Shown: piece after piece, positions 3,888 through 56,560 of the stretch | Layout: the number at the start of each line of letters is the position of its first letter | Position numbering within the stretch: the stretch's first letter is position 1 | Origin: Octopus sinensis | Lineage: Eukaryota | Assembly: GCF_006345805.1 (NCBI RefSeq) | Contig: NC_042997.1 | Span: 120,652,001-120,716,000, forward strand | DNA: 64,000 nucleotides | Direction of reading: 5' to 3' | Notes under the pieces: model-generated | The model's database searches: none | What the model was told of the DNA's origin: nothing | What the model saw: only the letters and a program-made list of their open reading frames with translations | Made by a program: the position numbers and the translations under genes

Positions 3888-6850
3888 GTGCTCGAATGGA
3901 TTCCACTATTCAAAACTTCTGTTCTGTTCCCAGAAAATACTTCATCCTGAATAGTTATTTTCCACGGATTCCAGTATTTGACAATGTTGACAGGAGGATC
4001 TTGTAGTCGACTCTGTCGAACGCTTTACTGAAGTTAAGCTATATGATACCAGAATTTTAAGGAAATCATGGATGTGATATAAAAGCTATGCTACACAGTC
4101 CCTGCCACAGCAAAAGTCATGATGGTTGAAATTTAGAAGTTTATGGCACTCCAGGAAGTAAGTTATTCTTGATCTTACCGCTCAGTTTGATGATATGAGA
4201 ATTGAGTGAAATGAGACGAGAGTTAACTGCAATATACCTGCTTTCCTTTTTGAAGACGGGGATATGAGATTGGAATAACTACTGTTTCGGTATATAGCCT
4301 GAGTCTAAAGAATTTCTTCAGGAGTCGGTTAGAGGGATTGCAAGTATTGTCTACTTTCCTTCATAGCACTAGCGGATGATGTATCAGGACATACATTTAT
4401 TGCTGTTATGATGTCTAAAGCAGTAAATTTTATGCCAAAATAATATGTTTAGCATTGATTTCGTTCATAACTCCTGCATCAATATCAGTGGTGTTACTAA
4501 AGACAAAACAGTATTGTTTCTGCAGTATTTTTGCCATTATTTTTACGTCATGTTGGAGAGTGCTGTTATCATCAATCAGTGGATGAACGGGTGAGACAGT
4601 GGCCCAGTAGTTTTCGGCATAGAATAGAACACTTTCGAGTTCTATTTTATTTTTAATTATCCAGTTTTTCGTAATTGCTCTTTGATTTGAGATGTAGATT
4701 TTCATGGTAAACTGCAGACGATGTATTTCTCACTCGAGCCATTTAATTGCTGTTGAATGCGAATGCAGCTGTTGCTAGTATTTTAATTGGCGTATTTCTT
4801 CTATTATTAAGGTTTTTTAAAATTATTTTATTATTAAGTTTTTTTTATTCTCCTAATTAGTGTTTTTATTTTAATCTTTAGAGCCTGTATTTATTAGTGC
4901 TCACGCGGTTTGTAGGAGCATGATTTCAGCATGTATATGTAACAACAATTCTAAAACGCTGCATGGTTCTTTCAATGTCAGAGAAGCACTGAGTGAAGAA
5001 CCATTCGGTGTGTGACAAATGTTTTTTTAGTGGCTTTCCTGTTTACTTTGTGAAAGTTGATGTAGTCGAACAGATGTTCCGTTTGGTTATGACATATCGG
5101 AAACGACAGAAACCATGTTAAGGAAAAGGAGATTTTTCAACTGAAATGCTATGTATAGCTTTAGTTTGTTAATGTCAGGTCCAGGTTCAATTTGTCTTAT
5201 CTCTTTGGGTCAAGCGCGTTCGATTTGGAAAAATTAATGCATTAAACCAAATAGTAATTCTGCTGCTGCTTTGCATGTTGTAGTGCAGTTCCCTAGCTTC
5301 AGAGTATTTATAGGCAAGTTCACAAATGGGAGCATAATATATGTTCCTTGAATTGTATTTTCGAGAGGAGACTTGAATTCTTTGAGGCACATTTTAAAGC
5401 AGTGTAGGAGTGATTCATAAGGCGTGCAGAGACCGGCAATATTTATGTCATTAACTTCCTTGAATAACGATATGGATTCTGAGTTACTATTTGAAAATAT
5501 GTCTTTGGCATCCAAAGAATCGTGGTTAAAAGTGGCTGCTCATTCATCGTATTGGTCTGTGCGATCTACACGGATGAATGTGATTTTTTTTTTACCAGCC
5601 CGACATTCATATGTATGTTGTTTATGTGAATTTCCTCACGGATGACGAAAAGGATGCAAAAGAGTGTGATTTCCACAGCCAGCTCTTCATGTATAAAATC
5701 TACCAGTTTGGGGTTATTCAATGAAGGGGTCGATGTCACCTAAATGTAGCAGTAATGTTGAACTGTAGTTTGGTTGTTGTTTGTATTGTAATAATTACTT
5801 TGTTTTAGGTATTTTGTTATTCAGTGGCAAAATTCAGGATAGTTTTTGTAAGGAACTCTTTGTGAGAAGTGGTATTGTAATTCAGTGGTCTCAAGCATTT
5901 ATTGCCTAGCGACCCCTTTGATTACTATTTTACTCATGTGAACCTCTACAGTTGATGTATATAAAAATCCCACTGAAGTTTTACAATTTAATATTATTAG
6001 GAATTGTACAAAACATTAAAATATTCTGCGTATTGTAAAAGTTACCCAAAAACAACTTTATATGGACGCCCAAATATCACATGGACTTCGGTTAAGATAC
6101 ACTATTCTAGTAAATGTTGCTGAGTATTCCTAGAGCTTTTAATATACGACTGCTGACAGCCGCTGAACCTCCAAGCTTTGGTCGGGCTTCGTGTTCTTCA
6201 GATTAGTCAGTAAAAAGAAATTTCCCTTTTGGTTTGTCATTAAATGAAGTGATATATAGTGCTTTTTTAGTTTATTTCGTTTCCCTATTGTTCTTTCTGA
6301 TTGATAGGGTTATTCGACGGTAGGTATTAGGAAGTGCACTGTGGTTTTATTTCGTTTTGGGTGCACCTCCCTTATGCTCTTTGTTTTTCATTTGTTTTGA
6401 GCCAATCAGATGGCGGTAGCTGCATTCCGGATTCAGGTAAATTCTTACAGAGAGAGAATTGGGACATAGTTTAGGATGGAAGAAGGCACACATTTGTTGC
6501 ATCCATATTTAGGGACAGGCTAAAGGCTTATTGAGATGACCCCCAACCTGTTGTCATGGAATCAGGTGCTATTCTGCACCCACTGACCAGTATAACTTCT
6601 AGATTTTCCATATTCTCATGAATTCTTTGATTGCATTCGCAGTTTTTATGTTCTGTAAAAAAGATTTTGAAGCTAATGTTACCCCTATTTTACTGTAAAT
6701 ACTGGCTGTTTCATCATCGTAGGTCGCTAGGTGTTCCAAGCTTTTGTTAGAGCATTCATTTTATTATATAGCCAGTGACGTTCCATAGAGCTATTTGCCA
6801 TGTTCAGTAGATAGAGTACTATTCTATACTAGACACTAGTTATTGGTCAG
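3888..6850 (-). mobile_element. Old degenerate CR1/L2-group LINE relic (ORF1 zinc-finger remnant, APE endonuclease, 5' half of RT)
   Basis: Minus-strand translation gives FSKAFDRVDYKILL (~4000), KGSRYIAVNSRLISLNSHIIK (~4200), an endonuclease-like stretch 5234-5650 (R.DR; FKMCLKEF..LENT...IMLPFVNLP), and AFFHPKLCPNSL...NPECSYRH (~6420-6500). The 5' limit is approximate. Confidence 0.75.
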
Positions 6851-49944: not shown

Positions 49945-49985
<41 letters not shown>

Positions 49986-49988
<3 letters not shown>

Positions 49989-50817
49989 CAATTAAGGACA
50001 ACTTCTTAATAAGGAAAACTTAACAAGAAATTATCGGGTAGATAGCGTGAAAAAACCTCATAAAAGAAAAAATTTCGAAAATAATTCTTTCTTATTGAAC
50101 ATATTAATTTATATATAGAGGGCATTATTATACATACATGCCACACGCTAAGAGGGACAAAATTAGTCATTTCTACCAAAAATTTTACTAATCCCACCGA
50201 ATGCAATTTTTCAAAGTAAGACATTTAAAAATATGGACTTGTATCACCTGTAATTTCATACCTCTGTATTCATCAGCAAGTCTGGATGTATCATAAATAA
50301 ACGAACCCACCTCATCCAAGCCTAGCAGCTAACTGATCGACTCCAACGAAGCACATGGGTTGGTTTACATATATTACATCCGGTAAATGGCATTTCGGGA
50401 ATGGAAAAGTTTTTTCACGCTATCTACCCGATAATTTCTTGTTAAGTTTTCCTTATTAAGAAGTTGTCCTTAATTGCTAAATTTTTATTCCGAAAAAACT
50501 TTTCCTTTCCCGAAATGCAATTCGTAAAAGTCTGCCATTTACCGGATGTAATATATGTAAACCAACCCATGTGCTTCGTTGGAGTCGATCAGTTAGCTGC
50601 TAGGCTTCGCTGAGGTGGGTTCGTTTATTTATGATACATCCAGACTTGCTGATGAATACAGAGGTATGAAATCACAGGTGATACAAGTCCATATTTTTAA
50701 ATGTCTTACTTTGAAAAATTGCATTCGGTGGGATTAGTAAAATTTTTGGTAGAAATGACTAATTTTGACCCTCTTAGCGTGTGGCATGTATGTATAATAA
50801 TGCGTTCTATATATAAA
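49986..50817. repeat. Interleaved double inverted repeat A-B-A'-B' (foldback/MITE-like)
   Basis: A 49986-50056 and A' 50409-50479 are a perfect 71-bp inverted pair; B 50108-50416 and B' 50492-50817 are an inverted pair with a few mismatches and a 17-bp indel. Confidence 0.9.
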
Positions 50818-51008: not shown

Positions 51009-51207
51009 ATCTCAATATATGTATATATATGTATATATATATAATATATGTTATATATATATATATTATATATATATAATATATATATATATATATGTAT
51101 AATATATATATAAATATATGTTTTTGATTGATTGATTGATTCTATTTCAGCTTATGAGCTGTGGCCATGGGGGGCACCGCCATTTGGTGTTGCTACTTGG
51201 TTTCACT

Positions 51208-54196
51208 TCATGGAGGCTTTCTAGCAACTGCTATTTGGTGCATGAGAGAGTTCGATGCAGCTGCCCTCATCTGCCCCTCCTGCCGTGAAGTTGGTTCATC
51301 TGGGACACCTGACGTGAAGAGATCCAGCTTCATTTTAAAGACATCTGTATCCACCCCATGCAGGTCTCTCAGGTTCTTCGGGAGGATATTGAAGAGCTGT
51401 GGGCCTCGGAAGCCCAGGCTATCACAGAATCTTGTCCTACATCTTGATGGCAGGTTTGGAGTCCTAGGCACCACGCAGTGGCGCCCAGTTCTGGCATTTG
51501 CGTAACTCTCGATGCCAAAGTTCAGAACACTTCCCTCCAGGATCTTCCAGATGTATATTATGGCATATCTTTCCCGCCTACGCCAGAGAATATAATTTTA
51601 ATCTCTTGAGTCTTTCCCAGTAGCTTACATTCTGCATAGAGGCTATCTTCTTTGTGTAGCTTCGTTGGATCGCCTCAAGTTCTGTGATCAACTTGACACT
51701 GGATGGTGACCATAGCTGAGAGCAATAGTCAAAGTGGCTTAGGACAAGTGTCTTCCAGAGGACCATCATGGTTTTTTGTTCTCTTGTTCTAAAGGTTCTA
51801 AGAACCCATCCAGCCAGCCGTCTACAGTTCATTGTCAGTTTAGCAACATGTACATGAAAGGTCGCGTCATCACTCATGTGAATACCCAGGTCACGCACTG
51901 ATTGTGCTCTGGGATTGCAATCCCTCCGGGTCCAGTGTATTCATTGGTATTGCATTCAGTTTTGCATGCTGATAGTATAAAGCTTGAAACTTTCCAGCAT
52001 TGAACTGCATGCTATTCTTTTCAGCCCACTGTATATTTCGTCCAGCTCACATTGCAGGTGTTTAGTGTCCTCAGGGTTCTGTATTGCCTGTGAAACTTTT
52101 GTATCATCTGCATAACTTGTGATCGTGGCTCTCTGCGTGGCTGAGGGCATGTCTGAGAGGGCCATTATGAACAGTAGTGGTCCCAGAACAGTGCCCTGCG
52201 GAACACCGCTCACTATTTGTGTGTTAATGGAGGTGGCCCCATTGGCTACTACCACCTGACTTCTATCCTTCAGAAAGTCATGAAGCCATTCTCCCAGTTT
52301 TCCAACTATGTTGAGATCACGCAGTTTGTGACATATCATTCCATGATCGACTTTATCAAAGGCCTTTGCAAAGTCGAGATATATCACTTCCACATTTGAG
52401 TGGTTGAGCAGCCGTTTCAGCACCCAGTCATAGTGTTGTAGGAGCTGAGTTAAACAGCTTCTCCCTGGTCGGAAACCATGTTGGGTGTCGGGCAGCAAGT
52501 CATTCTCTTCAAGGAAGGTGATCAGCTTCCTTCTGACTATTCGTTCCATGACTTGCTGATGTGTGAGGTCAGAGAGATAGGTCTATAGTTCTTGGCTTCC
52601 GCTCTGCTACCTCCTTTATGAATGGGGCATATTTAACCTTCCTTCAGTTTTCCTGGAAGTTTGCCAGCTGCAAGGAAGCTCTGAAAGAGGAACTGCAGTG
52701 TTATTGCTAGGACTCTCTTACATGCTTTTAGGAGGATTGCCGGGAATCCATCCGGGCCAGTAGATGAGTCTGTTTTCATTTCATCTATAGCCTTGGTTAC
52801 ATCGTCTTCCTTATATCGATGATGTAATCTATCGTCGCCGCCTCTGATTTTATATCTGCAGTGGTAAAAAAAGTCAGTGGATGGTTGTGATTTGGAGATG
52901 CCCAAGGGGTGGAGTGAAAACACTCTTGAATTGCTCATTCAGTATTTCACTTACCCTCATTGGTTTTCCTGTAAGTGTGCCATCCTTTTCGAGGAGTGGC
53001 CCTATTCTACAGTGCACTGTAGCTGTTTCTTTGGCATACCTGTAGAAGCTCTGGGGTTAGATTTTATGTTTTCTATAGCCCAGGCTTCTTTGTCTGCTCT
53101 TTCTTTTTCATGGGAGAGTTGCAGACATTTTCGATTTCCAACAGTTTTATTTTTAGGCGGGACTTTTCACTGCTTTCAATCTGTTGTTTAGGCGATTTGA
53201 AAATTTCGTACGCCGTCTCATTAAACTTTTCCTCTCTCTGGGGATTTTGTTCTTGTGTACAGTGGCCTTTCTCTCTGGGACACATTGTAGCATATGGCTT
53301 GCATTACAGACATGAATTGTTGAAGTTTCACGTCGATGTCTGGCGAGGAGAGACATTTAGGCCAGTTTTGTTGAGGATCTCTTTCTCAATTTGTTTCCAG
53401 TTGCCTTATGGTAGTTCAAGCTGGAAAGATTTTGAGGGTTTCTTGTAGGCTGCATGTCCGTGCTCTCTTTTGGCCCGTACATGGTCAGCTCTATCATGTT
53501 GTGATCCGAGAGTAGTGTCGGTGTCACTTTCACATTATGGATGAGATCCATGTCATTTGTGAAGCAGAGATCCAGTGTGTTACCTGCCCTGGTTGGTTGG
53601 AGTATTACCTGCTCCATGTACAGGGTGTTGATGAGGTTCAGGAGGGACCTCGCCTGTCCTCGTTCACATCTTGTCATTCCTGGGAGAGAAAGGCCCTCGG
53701 GCCATCTGACATTGGGCAGATTGAAGTCTCCCATAAGAAGCACACCTATGTGTTGTTCTAATGTGGTTAGAATTTCTTCTATTTTTATAAGGCAGTCTTC
53801 AAACTTGCCCACATGGCTTGCGGCATCTGGAGGGCGATATGTAGCACACACAACTACATCAAGTTGCCTAATATGTACAATTAGTGTGTCACACACCGAG
53901 TTTGAGTATGACAAGAGGACCAGGAGTGTGAGGTCCTCACGGATGTACATAGCAACACCTCCATGACTCCTTTCTTTCCTGTCGGTCCGTAGTACAGCAT
54001 ACTGTGGTATGTGTAACTCCGCATCTGCTATGTCCGGTTTCAGGTACGTTTCTGTAAGTGCTATGCATAAGGCTTGATTGCATGCAACAAAGTCTCTCAG
54101 GAACGGGATCTTTGTCCTGTTACTGAGTGTTTGCAGTCCTCTGATGTTCAGTAGGAGTATCGAGGTGAGGTGTACGTTGTTGCCGGCGGTGTCCAT
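51208..54196 (-). pseudogene. LINE ORF2 (APE endonuclease plus reverse transcriptase), multiply frameshifted in this sequence
   Basis: LLNIRGL, ALTETYL, RTDR..GGVAMYI, YRPP, MGDFNLP, NTLDLCF, SDHNMI; TGPDGFP, QHGFRPGRSCLTQLL, YLDFAKAFDKVDH, SGVPQGTVLGPLLF, YADDTK, RDLGI, DYCSQLWSP, VPDEP..AASNSL. Confidence 0.95.
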
Positions 54197-55058
54197 CCTG
54201 TGTCTGTTTGCTGTGGTGGTCTGGTATATAGTGGGTAGTCCCACCTGCGGGCTTGGTTTGATGAAGCCAGGTCAGCTGCTGTACAATCTTTTGTGCCATG
54301 CACAAAAAAGATTGTTGCTCAGCAGCTGCTCTTTCGACAACATCATGTTGGCTGTTTGTGGCGCGCACAACATCTGCGTACCTCCGCTTTGGAGCAGGTG
54401 GTGCGTGGTCCATCCCTTTTCTTTGTGTTGATGGTTTGTCCATCTGCCTCGTGTCTCTGTGGCAGGGTCCCCGATGTGCAAAGCGGCAGCCTGCACCTTC
54501 CTTTCCATGCCAGCAGGAACCTCTCAGGTAGAACATACACACCCGTGTGCGCTGTTTGGTTCCATCCTTTGCGGTTCCACTTCTATTTCTGGTTGTTTCA
54601 CTCTTTGGTCTTGCTTGAGCTTTTTCTTTTCCTTTAGCTCTTCCAGTCCTTCTTTTAGTTCTTCTTCCCCCTCTACCTCTTCACCGGGTTCTCCGTCTCC
54701 ATGGCCCTTGCTGCCGGTTGGAGAACTTGCACCTGGGTTCACTTCCCGGGCAGGTTTCATCTCATCAAAACTCCTCCCGGGCGTCCACCAGGTGGGGGTG
54801 ACTTCTTTCATCGTCTCCATTCTTGCCATCTTTGCTCCGCTCGTTCTCAAAGATGGCATCAAGTGCGCCAATGTGCGACCGTACAAGCGCATATGAGCGC
54901 ACGAATTCCTGTCTCTTTCGCTCCATCTGAGCCGCTGTCCTCTTGTAGCCTCTGCTCTTCAGCGCAGCCGCAATCACCTCCCTAGGGCTATCTCCGCCGG
55001 CGCACTCCCATGCTCGTACGAATAAATCCAGCTCGTCACGTCTCCATGCTCTGGACAT
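54120..55058 (-). pseudogene. LINE ORF1: Myb/SANT(trihelix)-like N-terminus, acidic/coiled-coil middle, CCCH zinc finger; at least 2 frameshifts
   Basis: MSRAWRRDELDLFVRAW...VIAAALKSRGYKRTAAQMERK...Y; EEVEGEEELKEGLEELKEKKKLKQ; CMFYLRGSCWHGKEGAGCRFAH. Confidence 0.75.
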
Positions 55059-55109: not shown

Positions 55110-56100
55110 CAGGAAGATATTAAGGCTAATTAGAAGATAGAGTACTTGAAAAAGAAATATTAACAATATTAAAGTTTGTGTAAAAACGTTATTTGGGTAA
55201 AAACGTTATTTAATCTTAAGGCTAATTAGGGGATAGAGTATCTGAAAATGTATTAGCAATATTAATATTATATTAGAGTGTGGATAAAAACGTTATTTAA
55301 TCTTAAGGCTAATTAGGAGATAGAGTATCTGAAAATATATTAGCAATATTAATATTATATTAGAGTGTGGGTAAAAAAAAAAAAAAACGTTATTTAATCT
55401 TAAGGCTAATTTGGAGATAGAGTATCTGAAAATATATTAGCAATATTAATATTATATTAGAGTGTGAGTAATATTAAACGTTATTTAATTTAATCTTAAG
55501 GCTAATTAGAAGACAGAGTATCTGAAAAATTATATATAAAATATTAAGCAATATTAACCGTTATTTAATTTAATCTTAAGGCTAATTAGACGTTATTAAT
55601 ATTAAACGTTATTTAATTTAATCTTAAGGCTAATTAGAAGATAGAGTATCTGAAGAATTATTAACAATATTAAAACAATATTAAACGTTATTTAATTTAA
55701 TCTTAAGGCTAATTAACAATAATATTAACAATATTAACAATATTAAACGTTATTAATTTAATCCTAAGGCTAATTAACAATAATTATTAACAATATTAAC
55801 AATATTAAACGTTATTTAATTTAATCCTAAGGCTAATTAGACGTTTTTAATATTAAACGTTATTTAATTTAATCTTAAGGCTAATTAGAAGATAGAGTAT
55901 CTGAAAAATTATTAACAATATTAAAACAATATTAAACGTTATTTAATTTAATCTTAAGGCTAATTAACAATAATTATTAACACTATTAAACAATATTAAA
56001 CGTTATTTAATTTAATCCTAAGGCTAATTTGACGGTATCAATATTAAACGTTATTTAATTTAATCTTAAGGCTAATTAGAAGATAGAGTATCTGGAAAAT
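55110..56100. repeat. AT-rich tandem array (13 core units, 48-97-bp periods) upstream of LINE ORF1
   Basis: Core AAACGTTATTTAA(TTTAA)TCTTAAGGCTAATT starts at 55201, 55288, 55385, 55476, 55556, 55604, 55683, 55745, 55807, 55855, 55934, 55998 and 56046. Confidence 0.95.
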
Positions 56101-56560
56101 TATTATATCGAGAACAGATATTGAAAATGTAAACAAACAAAATGACGATCGCAACTTTAACTAAGATGTGGGCCTAAGTGAAAGATAAAATAGAATAAAA
56201 AATAAAATATGTAATAGATGAAATTGATACTTAATCCAACAATGTGGTCTGGATTATTATTTTTTTTTTTGGTTTACGGGATTTTTTTCAAGAGAGATGC
56301 TTCTTTTTTCTTTCTTGCAGGAGATAACTTGATTCAGTTATTTTTGCACCATGTGCGTTTCGGCGAAAATGAAAATTACTGTGTATATGTATATATTTAT
56401 ATATATATTTTTAAAAATATTTTTAAACCAAAGTGTTGTAGTGATCTCTATGACTTAGAGTTTTACGTTTTGCAACTACAGTGGGTTATTTCGCCGTTCT
56501 ATGCAAACTTTTTCACAGAGCAAAGGCAATCACGTCTTTCTCTGCTGAAAACGGAACACA

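What the first reader, a model, noticed from the sequence alone, without database searches (positions are those of the whole stretch)
54120..55058. LINE ORF1 with a Myb/SANT (trihelix-type) DNA-binding-like domain plus a CCCH zinc finger
Seen: directly upstream of the APE-RT ORF2, three overlapping minus-strand ORFs stitch into one ORF1 of roughly 300 aa. The N-terminus W..DE...FV.AW...IAAAL..RGYKRT.AQ..K...Y follows the Myb/SANT-like (Myb_DNA-bind_4/MADF/trihelix) pattern; then an acidic/Lys coiled-coil-like segment; then C-x7-C-x8-C-x3-H (CMFYLRGSCWHGKEGAGCRFAH). Established: the ORF1 domains I know in CR1/L2/Jockey-group LINEs are RRM, CCHC knuckles, PHD, esterase or coiled-coil, and Myb/SANT-like proteins are typical of PIF/Harbinger DNA transposons and host transcription factors. 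Inference: this LINE family may have captured a sequence-specific DNA-binding module for self-regulation or insertion targeting. I do not know of a described case, but I could not search.
Basis: partly seen in the sequence, partly recalled or inferred. Interest (0 to 1): 0.8.

Follow-up and report, generated by a model that had tools for sequence, protein, structure and literature searches.

The report
Octopod LINE ORF1 with Myb/SANT-like domain
This is a decayed copy of an octopus-lineage LINE retrotransposon whose first protein begins with a Myb/SANT-like DNA-binding-type domain, where related LINEs carry a PHD finger, followed by an RNA-binding-type CCCH zinc finger; I found this ORF1 design in no paper.

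Summary
The main observation holds. On the minus strand, 55058-54148 is a LINE ORF1 that overlaps the start of an APE-RT ORF2.

- **N-terminal domain.** The first ~79 codons belong to the Myb_DNA-bind_4 family. A profile-profile comparison gives 96.9% probability (E 1.4e-10). One family member passes Pfam's cut-off. The AlphaFold model (pLDDT 88) best matches Myb/SANT structures.
- **Zinc finger.** The C-x7-C-x8-C-x3-H motif is a real CCCH finger; its profile matches an MBNL1 finger at E 1.4e-6.
- **Conservation.** The same design occurs in at least 20 protein clusters; all named ones are Octopus. An Argonauta hians copy has both ORFs intact.
ORF1 is one reading frame broken by three TGA stops and one late frameshift, not three stitched ORFs. 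The "acidic/Lys coiled-coil" segment comes from an unsupported frame. The real linker is basic and predicted disordered. A likely coiled-coil helix lies at the C-terminus.
- **Origin.** More distant relatives encode PHD + three CCCH fingers + the same helix. The CCCH finger is therefore ancestral, and the Myb/SANT-like domain replaced the PHD finger.

DNA binding, insertion targeting and self-regulation are untested. I rate it a new variant of a known kind.

The parts
54148..55058 (-). Decayed LINE ORF1, about 303 codons. It is one reading frame with three in-frame TGA stops and one frameshift near 54230.
   Evidence: All homologous ORF1s align in a single frame. The stop at 54150-54148 follows the frameshift.
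54822..55058 (-). N-terminal Myb/SANT-like domain (Myb_DNA-bind_4 type), residues 1-79: three-helix core plus a fourth helix. It starts at the initiator ATG (55058-55056).
   Evidence: Pfam PF13837 E 6e-4 to 9e-4, 20-20.6 bits, below the cut-off of 27. Family member P0133 scores 29.3 bits, above the cut-off. hhalign against true Myb_DNA-bind_4 repeats gives 96.9% probability, E 1.4e-10. AlphaFold pLDDT 87.7 with four helices. Best Foldseek match is the RAD Myb domain 2cjj.
54540..54821 (-). Linker: an acidic stretch, then an Arg/Lys/Gly-rich stretch. It holds the three TGA stops (54767-54765, 54764-54762, 54683-54681).
   Evidence: The equivalent region of intact P0121 (residues 81-168) has pLDDT below 50 and pI about 11.
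54474..54539 (-). CCCH zinc finger, C-x7-C-x8-C-x3-H (CMFYLRGSCWHGKEGAGCRFAH).
   Evidence: Ligand positions are invariant in 10 ORF1s. The finger profile matches MBNL1 at E 1.4e-6 and CPSF30 at E 0.01. Pfam CCCH models match only weakly, all below their cut-offs.
54261..54380 (-). Conserved C-terminal helix (YAD.V...AAAEQ.SFL.MAQ.IV.QLTWLH), a candidate multimerisation helix.
   Evidence: Conserved across the Myb-type ORF1s, with a similar helix in the PHD-type ORF1s. AlphaFold gives a helix at residues 236-275 of P0121 with pLDDT about 90. The heptad a/d positions are mostly hydrophobic.
51208..54196 (-). Decayed ORF2. The ATG at 54196 overlaps the end of ORF1. APE domain 54169-53480; RT domain about 52555-51584; conserved C-terminal region to the stop at 51210-51208.
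   Evidence: It is 82% identical to P0001 and has at least 16 stops plus frameshifts relative to intact relatives.
51125..51207 (-). 3' UTR with two conserved short hairpins (GGCGGTGCCCC..CATGGCC and CAGCT..AGCTG) and an (AATC)n tail. This marks the 3' end of the element.
   Evidence: conserved in 5 copies, each ending in a different short microsatellite-like tail. Only one pair covaries.
55117..56105 (-). AT-rich tandem array directly 5' of ORF1 (units of about 87-97 bp and about 64 bp). It may be the 5' UTR or promoter of this copy; membership is not established.
   Evidence: Upstream regions of L001 and L008 carry unrelated arrays or none directly adjacent.

Best explanation
The region is the dead ORF1 of an APE-type, two-ORF LINE family found in octopods (Octopus vulgaris, O. 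sinensis, Argonauta hians).

Architecture (shown). In intact copies ORF1p is about 290 aa and consists of:
1. a Myb/SANT-like domain of the Myb_DNA-bind_4 family at the extreme N-terminus;
2. a basic, disordered linker;
3. one MBNL-like CCCH zinc finger;
4. a second disordered stretch;
5. a conserved C-terminal amphipathic helix of about 40 residues.

Origin (inferred from comparison). Sister LINEs, with ORF2 42-48% identical, encode a PHD finger, three CCCH fingers and the same kind of helix. One contig (L010) carries the Myb-like domain and, in another reading frame of the same strand, three CCCH fingers; they are linked only by lying on one 965-bp contig. The parsimonious history is a swap of the N-terminal module from PHD to Myb/SANT-like on a CCCH-type ORF1 backbone. 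Two of the three CCCH fingers were lost later.

Mechanism (inferred, not shown). The CCCH finger and the basic linker bind the LINE RNA. The C-terminal helix multimerises the protein, as the coiled coil does in L1 ORF1p. The N-terminal domain is basic (median pI 9.3) and has a conserved Arg/Lys-rich third helix. I propose that it docks the RNA-protein particle on DNA or chromatin, taking over the chromatin-docking role that has been proposed, but not tested, for the PHD finger in related elements.
For: Architecture and conservation:
-.
- L001 has an intact ORF1 (291 aa) and an intact ORF2 (1021 aa).
- Octopus proteins A0AA36F9C8, A0AA36AFU2, A0AA36BK05 and XP_036366487.1 carry the domain.

Myb/SANT-like identity:
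- Pfam PF13837 is the top hit for the window copy.
- the same is true of the isolated N-terminal domain of a copy only 36% identical; for its whole ORF1 PF13837 ranks second, just behind a CCCH model.
- 6 of 22 members match PF13837, best E 1.8e-7, and no competing family appears.
- P0133 scores 29.3 bits against the cut-off of 27. The distant profile hits P0144 and P0146 are true Myb_DNA-bind_4 proteins (E 2e-49 and 1e-40).
- hhalign 96.9% probability, E 1.4e-10, over the whole domain including the C-terminal LD.I motif.
- a confident helical model whose best low-rmsd matches are Myb/SANT domains (RAD, PHR1, CDC5L, GT-1, DMAP1, c-Myb).

CCCH finger:
-.

Modular structure:
-.

PHD-type relatives:
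-.

Intermediate (Myb-like domain plus three CCCH fingers):
-.
Against: - The window copy itself scores below Pfam's gathering cut-off (20-20.6 bits against 27).
- No Foldseek match reaches E 1e-3; the domain is small.
- A sequence search of the PDB with the domain profile found nothing meaningful.
- The direction of the swap rests on ORF2 identity bands and on PHD being widespread in CR1/L2 ORF1s (PMC4120745). It does not rest on a rooted tree.
- In the intermediate L010 the two parts lie in different frames of a 965-bp contig.
- No functional datum exists. Myb/SANT-like folds can bind DNA, histone tails or other proteins.
- The LINE clade (CR1 versus L2 or another) was not determined.
Confidence: 0.8

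Rival explanations
1. The Myb/SANT-like domain is a sequence-specific DNA binder. It would either direct insertion to particular sites, as the Myb domains of R2 and R4/Dong are thought to do, or bind the element's own 5' tandem array to regulate its transcription.
For: - Myb_DNA-bind_4 domains in trihelix factors are sequence-specific DNA binders (established knowledge).
- The domain is basic and has a conserved putative recognition helix.
- Myb domains are linked to site-specific insertion in R2 and R4/Dong (PMC7998251).
- A tandem array lies directly upstream of ORF1 in the window, and a different one lies upstream in L008.
Against: - The upstream arrays of the window, L008 and L001 are unrelated in sequence and position.
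- The window, L001 and L008 share no evident 3' flanking sequence; their 5' flanks were compared only for tandem repeats.
- Copies lie on several O. vulgaris chromosomes.
- The ORF2 endonuclease is an ordinary APE type.
- Only three loci with flanks were available, so the test is weak.
Confidence: 0.2
2. The domain acts as a SANT-type protein or histone-tail interaction module, or as an RNA-binding module, and does not contact DNA.
For: - It replaces a PHD finger, and PHD fingers in other proteins read histone tails (PMC4120745).
- Foldseek matches include SANT domains (DMAP1 3hm5 and the SMRT/NCoR SANT in 4a69).
Against: - Histone-binding SANT domains are typically acidic (my own knowledge), whereas this domain is basic (median pI 9.3).
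- Its sequence family, PF13837, is the DNA-binding trihelix type.
Confidence: 0.2
3. The N-terminal segment is not part of the element. It would be a chance ORF, an unrelated insertion, or a host exon next to a 5'-truncated LINE.
For: - The window copy is decayed, and a double stop follows the domain immediately.
- Several database proteins that carry the domain are short fragments.
Against: - The domain is joined to the same linker, CCCH finger and helix, and followed by an APE ORF2, in the window, L001, L008 and L011.
- In Argonauta it sits in one uninterrupted 291-codon ORF.
- The initiator MSR.W is conserved between the window and Argonauta.
Confidence: 0.02
4. ORF1 is read in three frames, with an acidic/Lys coiled coil in the middle.
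For: - The middle frame is open for 122 codons.
- Some relatives have an acidic stretch just after the domain (P0122, P0125).
Against: - All 13 homologous ORF1s align to the window in one frame through the linker, and none aligns in the middle ORF's frame.
- The first and third ORFs share a frame, so no net frameshift is needed.
- The linker is low-complexity, so this evidence is moderate rather than absolute.
Confidence: 0.07

Closest known systems
PHD-type ORF1 ('Type III') of CR1/L2-lineage LINEs (Kapitonov & Jurka 2003; Khazina & Weichenrieder 2009; Metcalfe & Casane 2014, PMC4120745)
   Same: - It is an ORF1 directly upstream of an APE-RT ORF2.
- It has a small N-terminal chromatin or nucleic-acid-binding module and lacks RRM, CCHC, Tnp22 and esterase domains.
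- The nearest more distant relatives found here (L005, L006, L007) are of this type and share the first CCCH finger and a similar C-terminal helix.
   Different: - The PHD finger is replaced by a Myb/SANT-like domain.
- Only one of the three CCCH fingers is kept.
- The 2014 catalogue lists neither Myb nor CCCH.
N-terminal Myb domains of R2 and R4/Dong non-LTR retrotransposons (PMC7998251; PMC12203849)
   Same: A Myb/SANT-type helical domain is encoded by a non-LTR retrotransposon and is thought to dock the element on DNA.
   Different: - Those elements have a single ORF, a REL endonuclease and site-specific insertion, and the Myb domain is part of the RT protein.
- Their matches are to PF00249 or PF16282, not PF13837.
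- Here the domain is in ORF1 of an APE-type two-ORF element with no evident site specificity.
Host Myb_DNA-bind_4 (PF13837) proteins: plant trihelix GT factors, animal multi-repeat proteins such as Branchiostoma XP_078662762.1 (P0144), and PIF/Harbinger Myb-like proteins
   Same: They share the sequence family and fold, including the W...W...Y core, the basic third helix and the C-terminal F/L..LD..I extension.
   Different: - Here there is a single copy with shortened loops between helices 1-2 and 3-4.
- It is fused to a CCCH finger inside a retrotransposon ORF1.
- No transposase partner or terminal inverted repeats are present.
- The donor gene was not identified.
MBNL1, CPSF30 and RBM22 RNA-binding CCCH zinc fingers
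   Same: They share the ligand order and the flanking residues (C.FY.RG.C..G...CRFAHP); MBNL1 matches at E 1.4e-6.
   Different: The second spacer is 8 residues instead of 4-6. Pfam CCCH models score below their cut-offs.
L1 ORF1p (coiled coil + RRM + CTD)
   Same: The likely job is the same: multimerise through a helix, bind the element's RNA, and use disordered basic regions.
   Different: There is no sequence or domain homology. The helix is C-terminal, RNA binding would be through the CCCH finger, and there is an extra DNA-binding-type domain.

Membership tests
Myb_DNA-bind_4 (PF13837) Myb/SANT-like domain | A single-sequence match to the Pfam model at or above its gathering score (27 bits). 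| tested here: inconclusive
   - The window copy scores 20-20.6 bits (E 6e-4 to 9e-4), below the cut-off.
- The isolated Argonauta domain scores 23 bits.
- Family member P0133 scores 29.3 bits, above the cut-off.
- 6 of 22 members match at E <= 0.01, best 1.8e-7, and PF13837 is the only recurring family.
Myb_DNA-bind_4 (PF13837) Myb/SANT-like domain | Profile-level homology over the whole domain to undisputed family members. | tested here: met
   - hhalign of 22 N-terminal domains against 7 repeats of P0144 and P0146 gives 96.9% probability, E 1.4e-10, over 71 columns. P0144 and P0146 match PF13837 at E 2e-49 and 1e-40.
- A two-sequence profile retrieves those proteins from 1.84 billion representatives at E 4e-4 to 1e-3.
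Myb_DNA-bind_4 (PF13837) Myb/SANT-like domain | A three-helix Myb/SANT fold with an aromatic core, plus a C-terminal extra helix. | tested here: met
   - The AlphaFold model has pLDDT 87.7 and helices at 7-20, 25-35, 42-60 and 63-79.
- The best Foldseek match is 2cjj, the RAD Myb domain (probability 0.91, TM 0.76 on the target, rmsd 2.0).
- Further matches are PHR1, CDC5L, GT-1, DMAP1 SANT and c-Myb R2.
- No match reaches E <= 1e-3.
Myb_DNA-bind_4 (PF13837) Myb/SANT-like domain | Binds DNA. | not testable with these tools
   Only indirect evidence: median pI 9.3 and conserved R40, Q44, K48 and Y56 in or next to helix 3.
CCCH zinc finger (RNA-binding type) | Conserved Cys-Cys-Cys-His ligands in order. 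| tested here: met
   C, C, C and H, plus an H and a G, are invariant in 10 ORF1s from Myb-type and PHD-type elements. The spacing x7-x8-x3 is unusual in its second spacer.
CCCH zinc finger (RNA-binding type) | A significant sequence match to known CCCH fingers. | tested here: met
   - The finger profile matches solved structures: MBNL1 3d2q at E 1.4e-6, CPSF30 at E 0.01, RBM22 at E 0.05.
- Single-sequence Pfam hits are weak only: zf_CCCH_4 E 1e-3 and zf-CCCH E 0.1-0.2, all below their cut-offs.
CCCH zinc finger (RNA-binding type) | Binds zinc and RNA. | not testable with these tools
   AlphaFold models the finger at pLDDT about 71-75. No biochemical evidence.
LINE ORF1 (first ORF of an APE-type non-LTR retrotransposon) | Lies on the same strand, directly upstream of and overlapping an APE-RT ORF2, and recurs in dispersed copies. 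| tested here: met
   Seen in the window, L001 (both ORFs intact), L008 and L011. Copies lie on several O. vulgaris chromosomes.
PHD-type (Type III) ORF1 of CR1/L2 LINEs | An N-terminal PHD finger. | tested here: not met
   Pfam finds no PHD match in the ORF1s scanned whole: the window copy (as three ORF pieces) and the Myb-type relatives L001, P0129, P0140, P0128 and P0141. PHD is present in the relatives L005 and L007 (E 7e-4 and 1.7e-4).
CR1 or L2 clade of LINEs | Placement of the RT domain with reference CR1 or L2 elements in a phylogeny. | not tested
   No reference library (Repbase or Dfam) was available. Indirect evidence only: PHD-type ORF1 in the nearest relatives, and a 3' end with conserved hairpins and a short microsatellite tail instead of poly(A).
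R2 and R4/Dong Myb-bearing site-specific LINEs | A Myb domain in the RT polypeptide, a REL endonuclease, and insertion at one target sequence. | tested here: not met
   The domain is in ORF1. The endonuclease is APE type. The window, L001 and L008 share no evident 3' flanking sequence.
PIF/Harbinger Myb-like protein | Encoded next to a DDE transposase within terminal inverted repeats. | tested here: not met
   The neighbouring gene is an APE-RT ORF2 in all four loci, and ORF listing and translation of the element found no transposase. Terminal inverted repeats were not searched for across the element.

The most novel reading that the evidence does not exclude
ORF1p of this octopod LINE family is a true sequence-reading DNA-binding protein. 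Its Myb/SANT-like domain would recognise a DNA motif and steer the RNA-protein particle to preferred insertion sites or to its own promoter. That would be the first case of target or promoter recognition delegated to ORF1p in an APE-type LINE. It would also give a natural example of swapping a PHD 'reader' for a Myb 'reader' module on a retrotransposon chaperone.
Probability: 0.2. Interest if true: 0.75.

Novelty: new variant of a known kind. Interest (0 to 1): 0.55.

Why it matters
- **Extends the ORF1 catalogue.** The ORF1 proteins of CR1/L2-type LINEs are known to be modular: PHD, RRM, CCHC, esterase and L1-like. The published catalogue I could read lists neither a Myb/SANT-like domain nor CCCH fingers.
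- **Describes a CCCH-based ORF1 backbone.** It consists of one to three CCCH fingers and a C-terminal helix.
- **Shows a module swap.** At the N-terminus of this backbone a PHD finger has been exchanged for a DNA-binding-type Myb/SANT-like domain.
- **Points to a function.** The exchange suggests that the N-terminal module docks the particle on chromatin or DNA. This can be tested with the intact Argonauta copy.
- **Helps annotation.** Several 'uncharacterized' Octopus proteins carrying this domain or this ORF1 design (A0AA36F9C8, A0AA36AFU2, A0AA36BK05, A0AA36AX83, XP_036366487.1) are very probably LINE ORF1 remnants; only A0AA36AX83 was checked against its genomic context (L008).

Tried and rejected
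Searches that led nowhere:
1. The word-indexed protein search with the window ORF1 alone found nothing. Homologs appeared only through ORF2 neighbours, an alignment query and the exhaustive profile search.
2. A PDB sequence search with the N-terminal domain profile gave only spurious ribosomal protein S8 matches at E 0.02 or worse.
3. The scan of JGI metagenome contigs for the domain failed twice. The 22-sequence alignment was too divergent to seed it. A 5-sequence alignment matched 599 patterns, but tblastn confirmed none.
4. A literature look-up of the accessions GCA_024449705.1, SRR22824287 and SRR20902413 did not identify those organisms.
5. Literature searches for ORF1 with Myb, SANT, trihelix or CCCH in LINEs returned only host restriction factors (ZAP, ZCCHC3), the R2 and R4 Myb domains, and general reviews.

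Readings considered and rejected:
6. The three-frame stitching and the acidic coiled-coil middle segment.
7. The weak Pfam hits LisH_WDR26 and Torus, as chance or redundant with the CCCH finger.
8. A shared 5' tandem array as a family feature, since the arrays differ between copies.

Not done:
9. I did not attempt a clade assignment, for lack of reference sequences.


Full report
**What is in the window**

On the minus strand there is one decayed LINE.
- ORF2 carries an APE endonuclease domain (Pfam Exo_endo_phos_2, E 1.3e-12) and a reverse transcriptase domain (RVT_1, E 2e-20).
- Relative to intact relatives ORF2 has at least 16 stops and several frameshifts.
- Its ATG at 54196 overlaps the end of the upstream ORF1.
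- No second copy of this family is in the window. An unrelated RT fragment lies at about 3958-4347.

**Reading frame of ORF1**

- I aligned 13 homologous ORF1 proteins to the window with tblastn. Each aligned in that single frame across the whole span. Examples are P0129 residues 13-368 to 55037-54141 and P0121 residues 1-276 to 55058-54228.
- None matched the frame of the middle ORF, 54892-54524.
- ORF1 is therefore one frame broken by three TGA codons at 54767-54765, 54764-54762 and 54683-54681.
- A frameshift near 54230 follows. After it the true C-terminus (…TRPPQQTDTGWTPP…YSY) ends at the stop 54150-54148. This tail matches the O. vulgaris protein P0122 at E 6e-7.
- The "acidic/Lys coiled-coil-like" segment is a translation of the unsupported frame.

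**Relatives**

The window's ORF1 alone found nothing in the word-indexed protein search. The ORF2 search found more:
- a Logan contig at 82% identity;
- metagenome contigs at 64-66% identity;
- an Argonauta hians chromosome at 59% identity;
- thousands of LINE ORF2s, the best-listed of which are 40-48% identical.

The Argonauta locus L001 holds an uninterrupted ORF1 of 291 aa and an overlapping uninterrupted ORF2 of 1021 aa. Its ORF1 has the same order of parts as the window:
- MSRNW… N-terminal domain (36% identical to the window; tblastn E 7.6e-10);
- basic linker;
- C-x7-C-x8-C-x3-H finger;
- the YADAV…EQ.NFL.VAQ..V..LTW.H tail.

Other loci agree.
- An O. vulgaris locus (L008) has the same layout, with one frameshift inside the domain.
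- A second, divergent family (P0140/L011) comes from the same sequencing run as the Argonauta-like contig. It again shows the domain, finger and tail followed by the start of an APE ORF2.

An exhaustive HMMER search used a profile of just two N-terminal domains against 1.84 billion representatives.
- It returned 24 proteins at E <= 1e-3: the profile's own input P0121, 21 further proteins carrying the domain, one unexamined hit (P0135), and the two weakest hits.
- Several of the domain-bearing hits have the full design (P0129, P0140, P0128, P0141).
- All the named ones among them are Octopus vulgaris or O. sinensis 'uncharacterized' proteins on different chromosomes.
- The two weakest hits are a Branchiostoma protein and an unnamed protein. 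Both are multi-repeat Myb_DNA-bind_4 proteins.

The segment is therefore a fixed part of the family's ORF1 and not a local insertion.

**Identity of the N-terminal domain**

- PF13837 (Myb_DNA-bind_4) is the top Pfam hit for the window copy: E 6e-4 to 9e-4 and 20-20.6 bits, below the cut-off of 27.
- It is also the top hit for the isolated domain of the Argonauta copy, which is only 36% identical (23 bits). For the whole Argonauta ORF1 it ranks second, just behind a CCCH model.
- Of 22 domains scanned singly, 6 match PF13837, with a best E of 1.8e-7. No other family recurs.
- One member, P0133, passes the cut-off at 29.3 bits.
- A profile of the 22 domains aligns to a profile of 7 undisputed Myb_DNA-bind_4 repeats with 96.9% probability, E 1.4e-10. 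The alignment covers 71 columns, from the first Trp to the C-terminal LD.I motif.
- AlphaFold2 with the 22-sequence alignment gives pLDDT 87.7 and four helices.
- Foldseek against the PDB ranks the RAD Myb domain first (2cjj: probability 0.91, TM 0.76 on the target, rmsd 2.0 Å). Other low-rmsd matches are PHR1, CDC5L, GT-1, DMAP1-SANT, c-Myb R2 and TRF2.
- Because the domain is small, no Foldseek E-value reaches 1e-3.
- A PDB sequence search was uninformative.

Taken together, homology to the Myb/SANT-like (trihelix-type) family is well supported. The domain is basic, with median pI 9.3, and R40, Q44, K48 and Y56 are at least 90% conserved.

**The rest of the protein**

- The finger's C, C, H, G, C and H positions are invariant in 10 ORF1s.
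- Its profile matches the MBNL1 zinc finger at E 1.4e-6, and CPSF30 and RBM22 more weakly. All of these are RNA-binding CCCH fingers.
- AlphaFold2 of the intact Argonauta-type protein P0121 shows this layout:
  - ordered domain, residues 1-80;
  - disordered basic linker, 81-168;
  - a moderately confident finger, about 170-200;
  - a disordered stretch, 201-231;
  - a 40-residue helix, 236-275, with pLDDT about 90.
- The helix has mostly hydrophobic residues at heptad a/d positions.

**Origin**

Four loci whose ORF2s are 42-48% identical to the window's (L004-L007) have ORF1s with a different N-terminus.
- They begin with a PHD-like finger (Pfam PHD E 7e-4 and 1.7e-4).
- Three CCCH fingers follow, the first with the same x7-x8-x3 spacing.
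- A C-terminal SFLE… helix ends the protein.

A 965-bp contig (L010, P0133) carries the Myb-like domain and, in another frame of the same strand, three CCCH fingers of the PHD-type pattern.

PHD fingers are common in CR1/L2 ORF1s (PMC4120745). The simplest history is therefore that a CCCH-type ORF1 exchanged its N-terminal PHD finger for a Myb/SANT-like domain. The octopod branch later kept only one CCCH finger. This history is inferred; I built no rooted tree.

**How it probably works (inference)**

- The CCCH finger and the basic disordered linker bind the element's RNA.
- The C-terminal helix multimerises the protein, as in other ORF1 proteins.
- The N-terminal Myb/SANT-like domain docks the particle on DNA or chromatin. 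That is the role proposed, but never tested, for the PHD finger it replaced (PMC4120745).
- Sequence-specific targeting, or binding to the element's own 5' array, remains possible but has no support here. The upstream arrays differ among the window, L008 and L001. The three 3' flanks share no evident sequence.

**Comparison with what is known**

- The ORF1 catalogue for CR1/L2/Jockey lists PHD, RRM, CCHC, Tnp22, esterase and zf/lz, but neither Myb nor CCCH.
- Recent work on cephalopod, mollusc and CR1 elements that I could search does not mention this design.
- Repbase and Dfam could not be searched, so an unannotated consensus may already exist there.
- I rate it a new variant of a known kind (modular LINE ORF1) and of moderate interest. 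The clade (CR1, L2 or another) was not determined.

No step had to be referred. The element is a host LINE, not a virus, and I built no full-length consensus.

Noticed in passing
window 55117-56105: An AT-rich tandem array lies directly 5' of ORF1, with units of about 87-97 bp and about 64 bp. It is full of short palindromes (CTAATTAG, CTTAAG, AACGTT, AATATT). It is unique within the window and unrelated to the regions upstream of the Argonauta and O. vulgaris copies. Whether it is this subfamily's 5' UTR or promoter is open.
   Followed up: partly
window 51125-51207; L001 8385-8440; L008 9755-9812; L003 3160-3215; L002 3445-3500: The 3' UTR is conserved and has two short hairpins (GGCGGTGC…GCATGGCC and CAGC…GCTG). 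Each copy then ends in a different short microsatellite-like tail: (AATC)n in the window, (ATACAAG)2, A-rich, or (AAAT)n. There is no poly(A). Only one pair covaries among five copies.
   Followed up: partly
window 49977-50817: A large foldback lies about 300 bp beyond the LINE's 3' end. One pair of arms, 50108-50392 and 50533-50817, is 285 nt long and 98% complementary, with a 140-nt spacer. A second pair is 49977-50056 and 50409-50488 (80 nt, 96%). The foldback is embedded in (TA)n-rich microsatellite. Its nature (MITE, foldback element or recent inverted duplication) was not examined.
   Followed up: partly
window about 3958-4347 (minus strand): A second, unrelated and decayed LINE RT fragment. 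It is about 33% identical to this family's RT and has 6-7 stops within the match.
   Followed up: no
window 54524-54892 (minus strand): A 122-codon ORF is open in an alternative frame across the ORF1 linker, in purine-rich sequence. No homolog supports it, so it is most likely open by chance.
   Followed up: yes
L010 1-965 (GCA_024449705.1, organism not identified): The contig carries the Myb/SANT-like domain (P0133, the only member above Pfam's cut-off). In another frame of the same strand it carries three CCCH fingers of the PHD-type pattern. It may represent an intermediate ORF1 design.
   Followed up: partly
window 54318-54380; P0129; P0140: The YAD.VR motif before the C-terminal helix is duplicated (YADVVRA…DVVERAA) in the window, P0129 and P0140. 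It is single in the Argonauta P0121 and L002 copies. This is a lineage-specific short internal duplication.
   Followed up: no
L005 1015-2499; L006 2-1222; L007 3-1265: The ORF1s of the more distant LINE relatives combine a PHD-like finger with three CCCH fingers. The 2014 ORF1 catalogue (PMC4120745), which lists 'PHD only' types, does not mention CCCH fingers.
   Followed up: partly
L001 2500-3428: A 39-bp tandem array of about 24.5 copies (92% matches) lies about 1.1 kb upstream of the Argonauta ORF1 and runs to the edge of the region examined. Its relation to the element is unknown.
   Followed up: no
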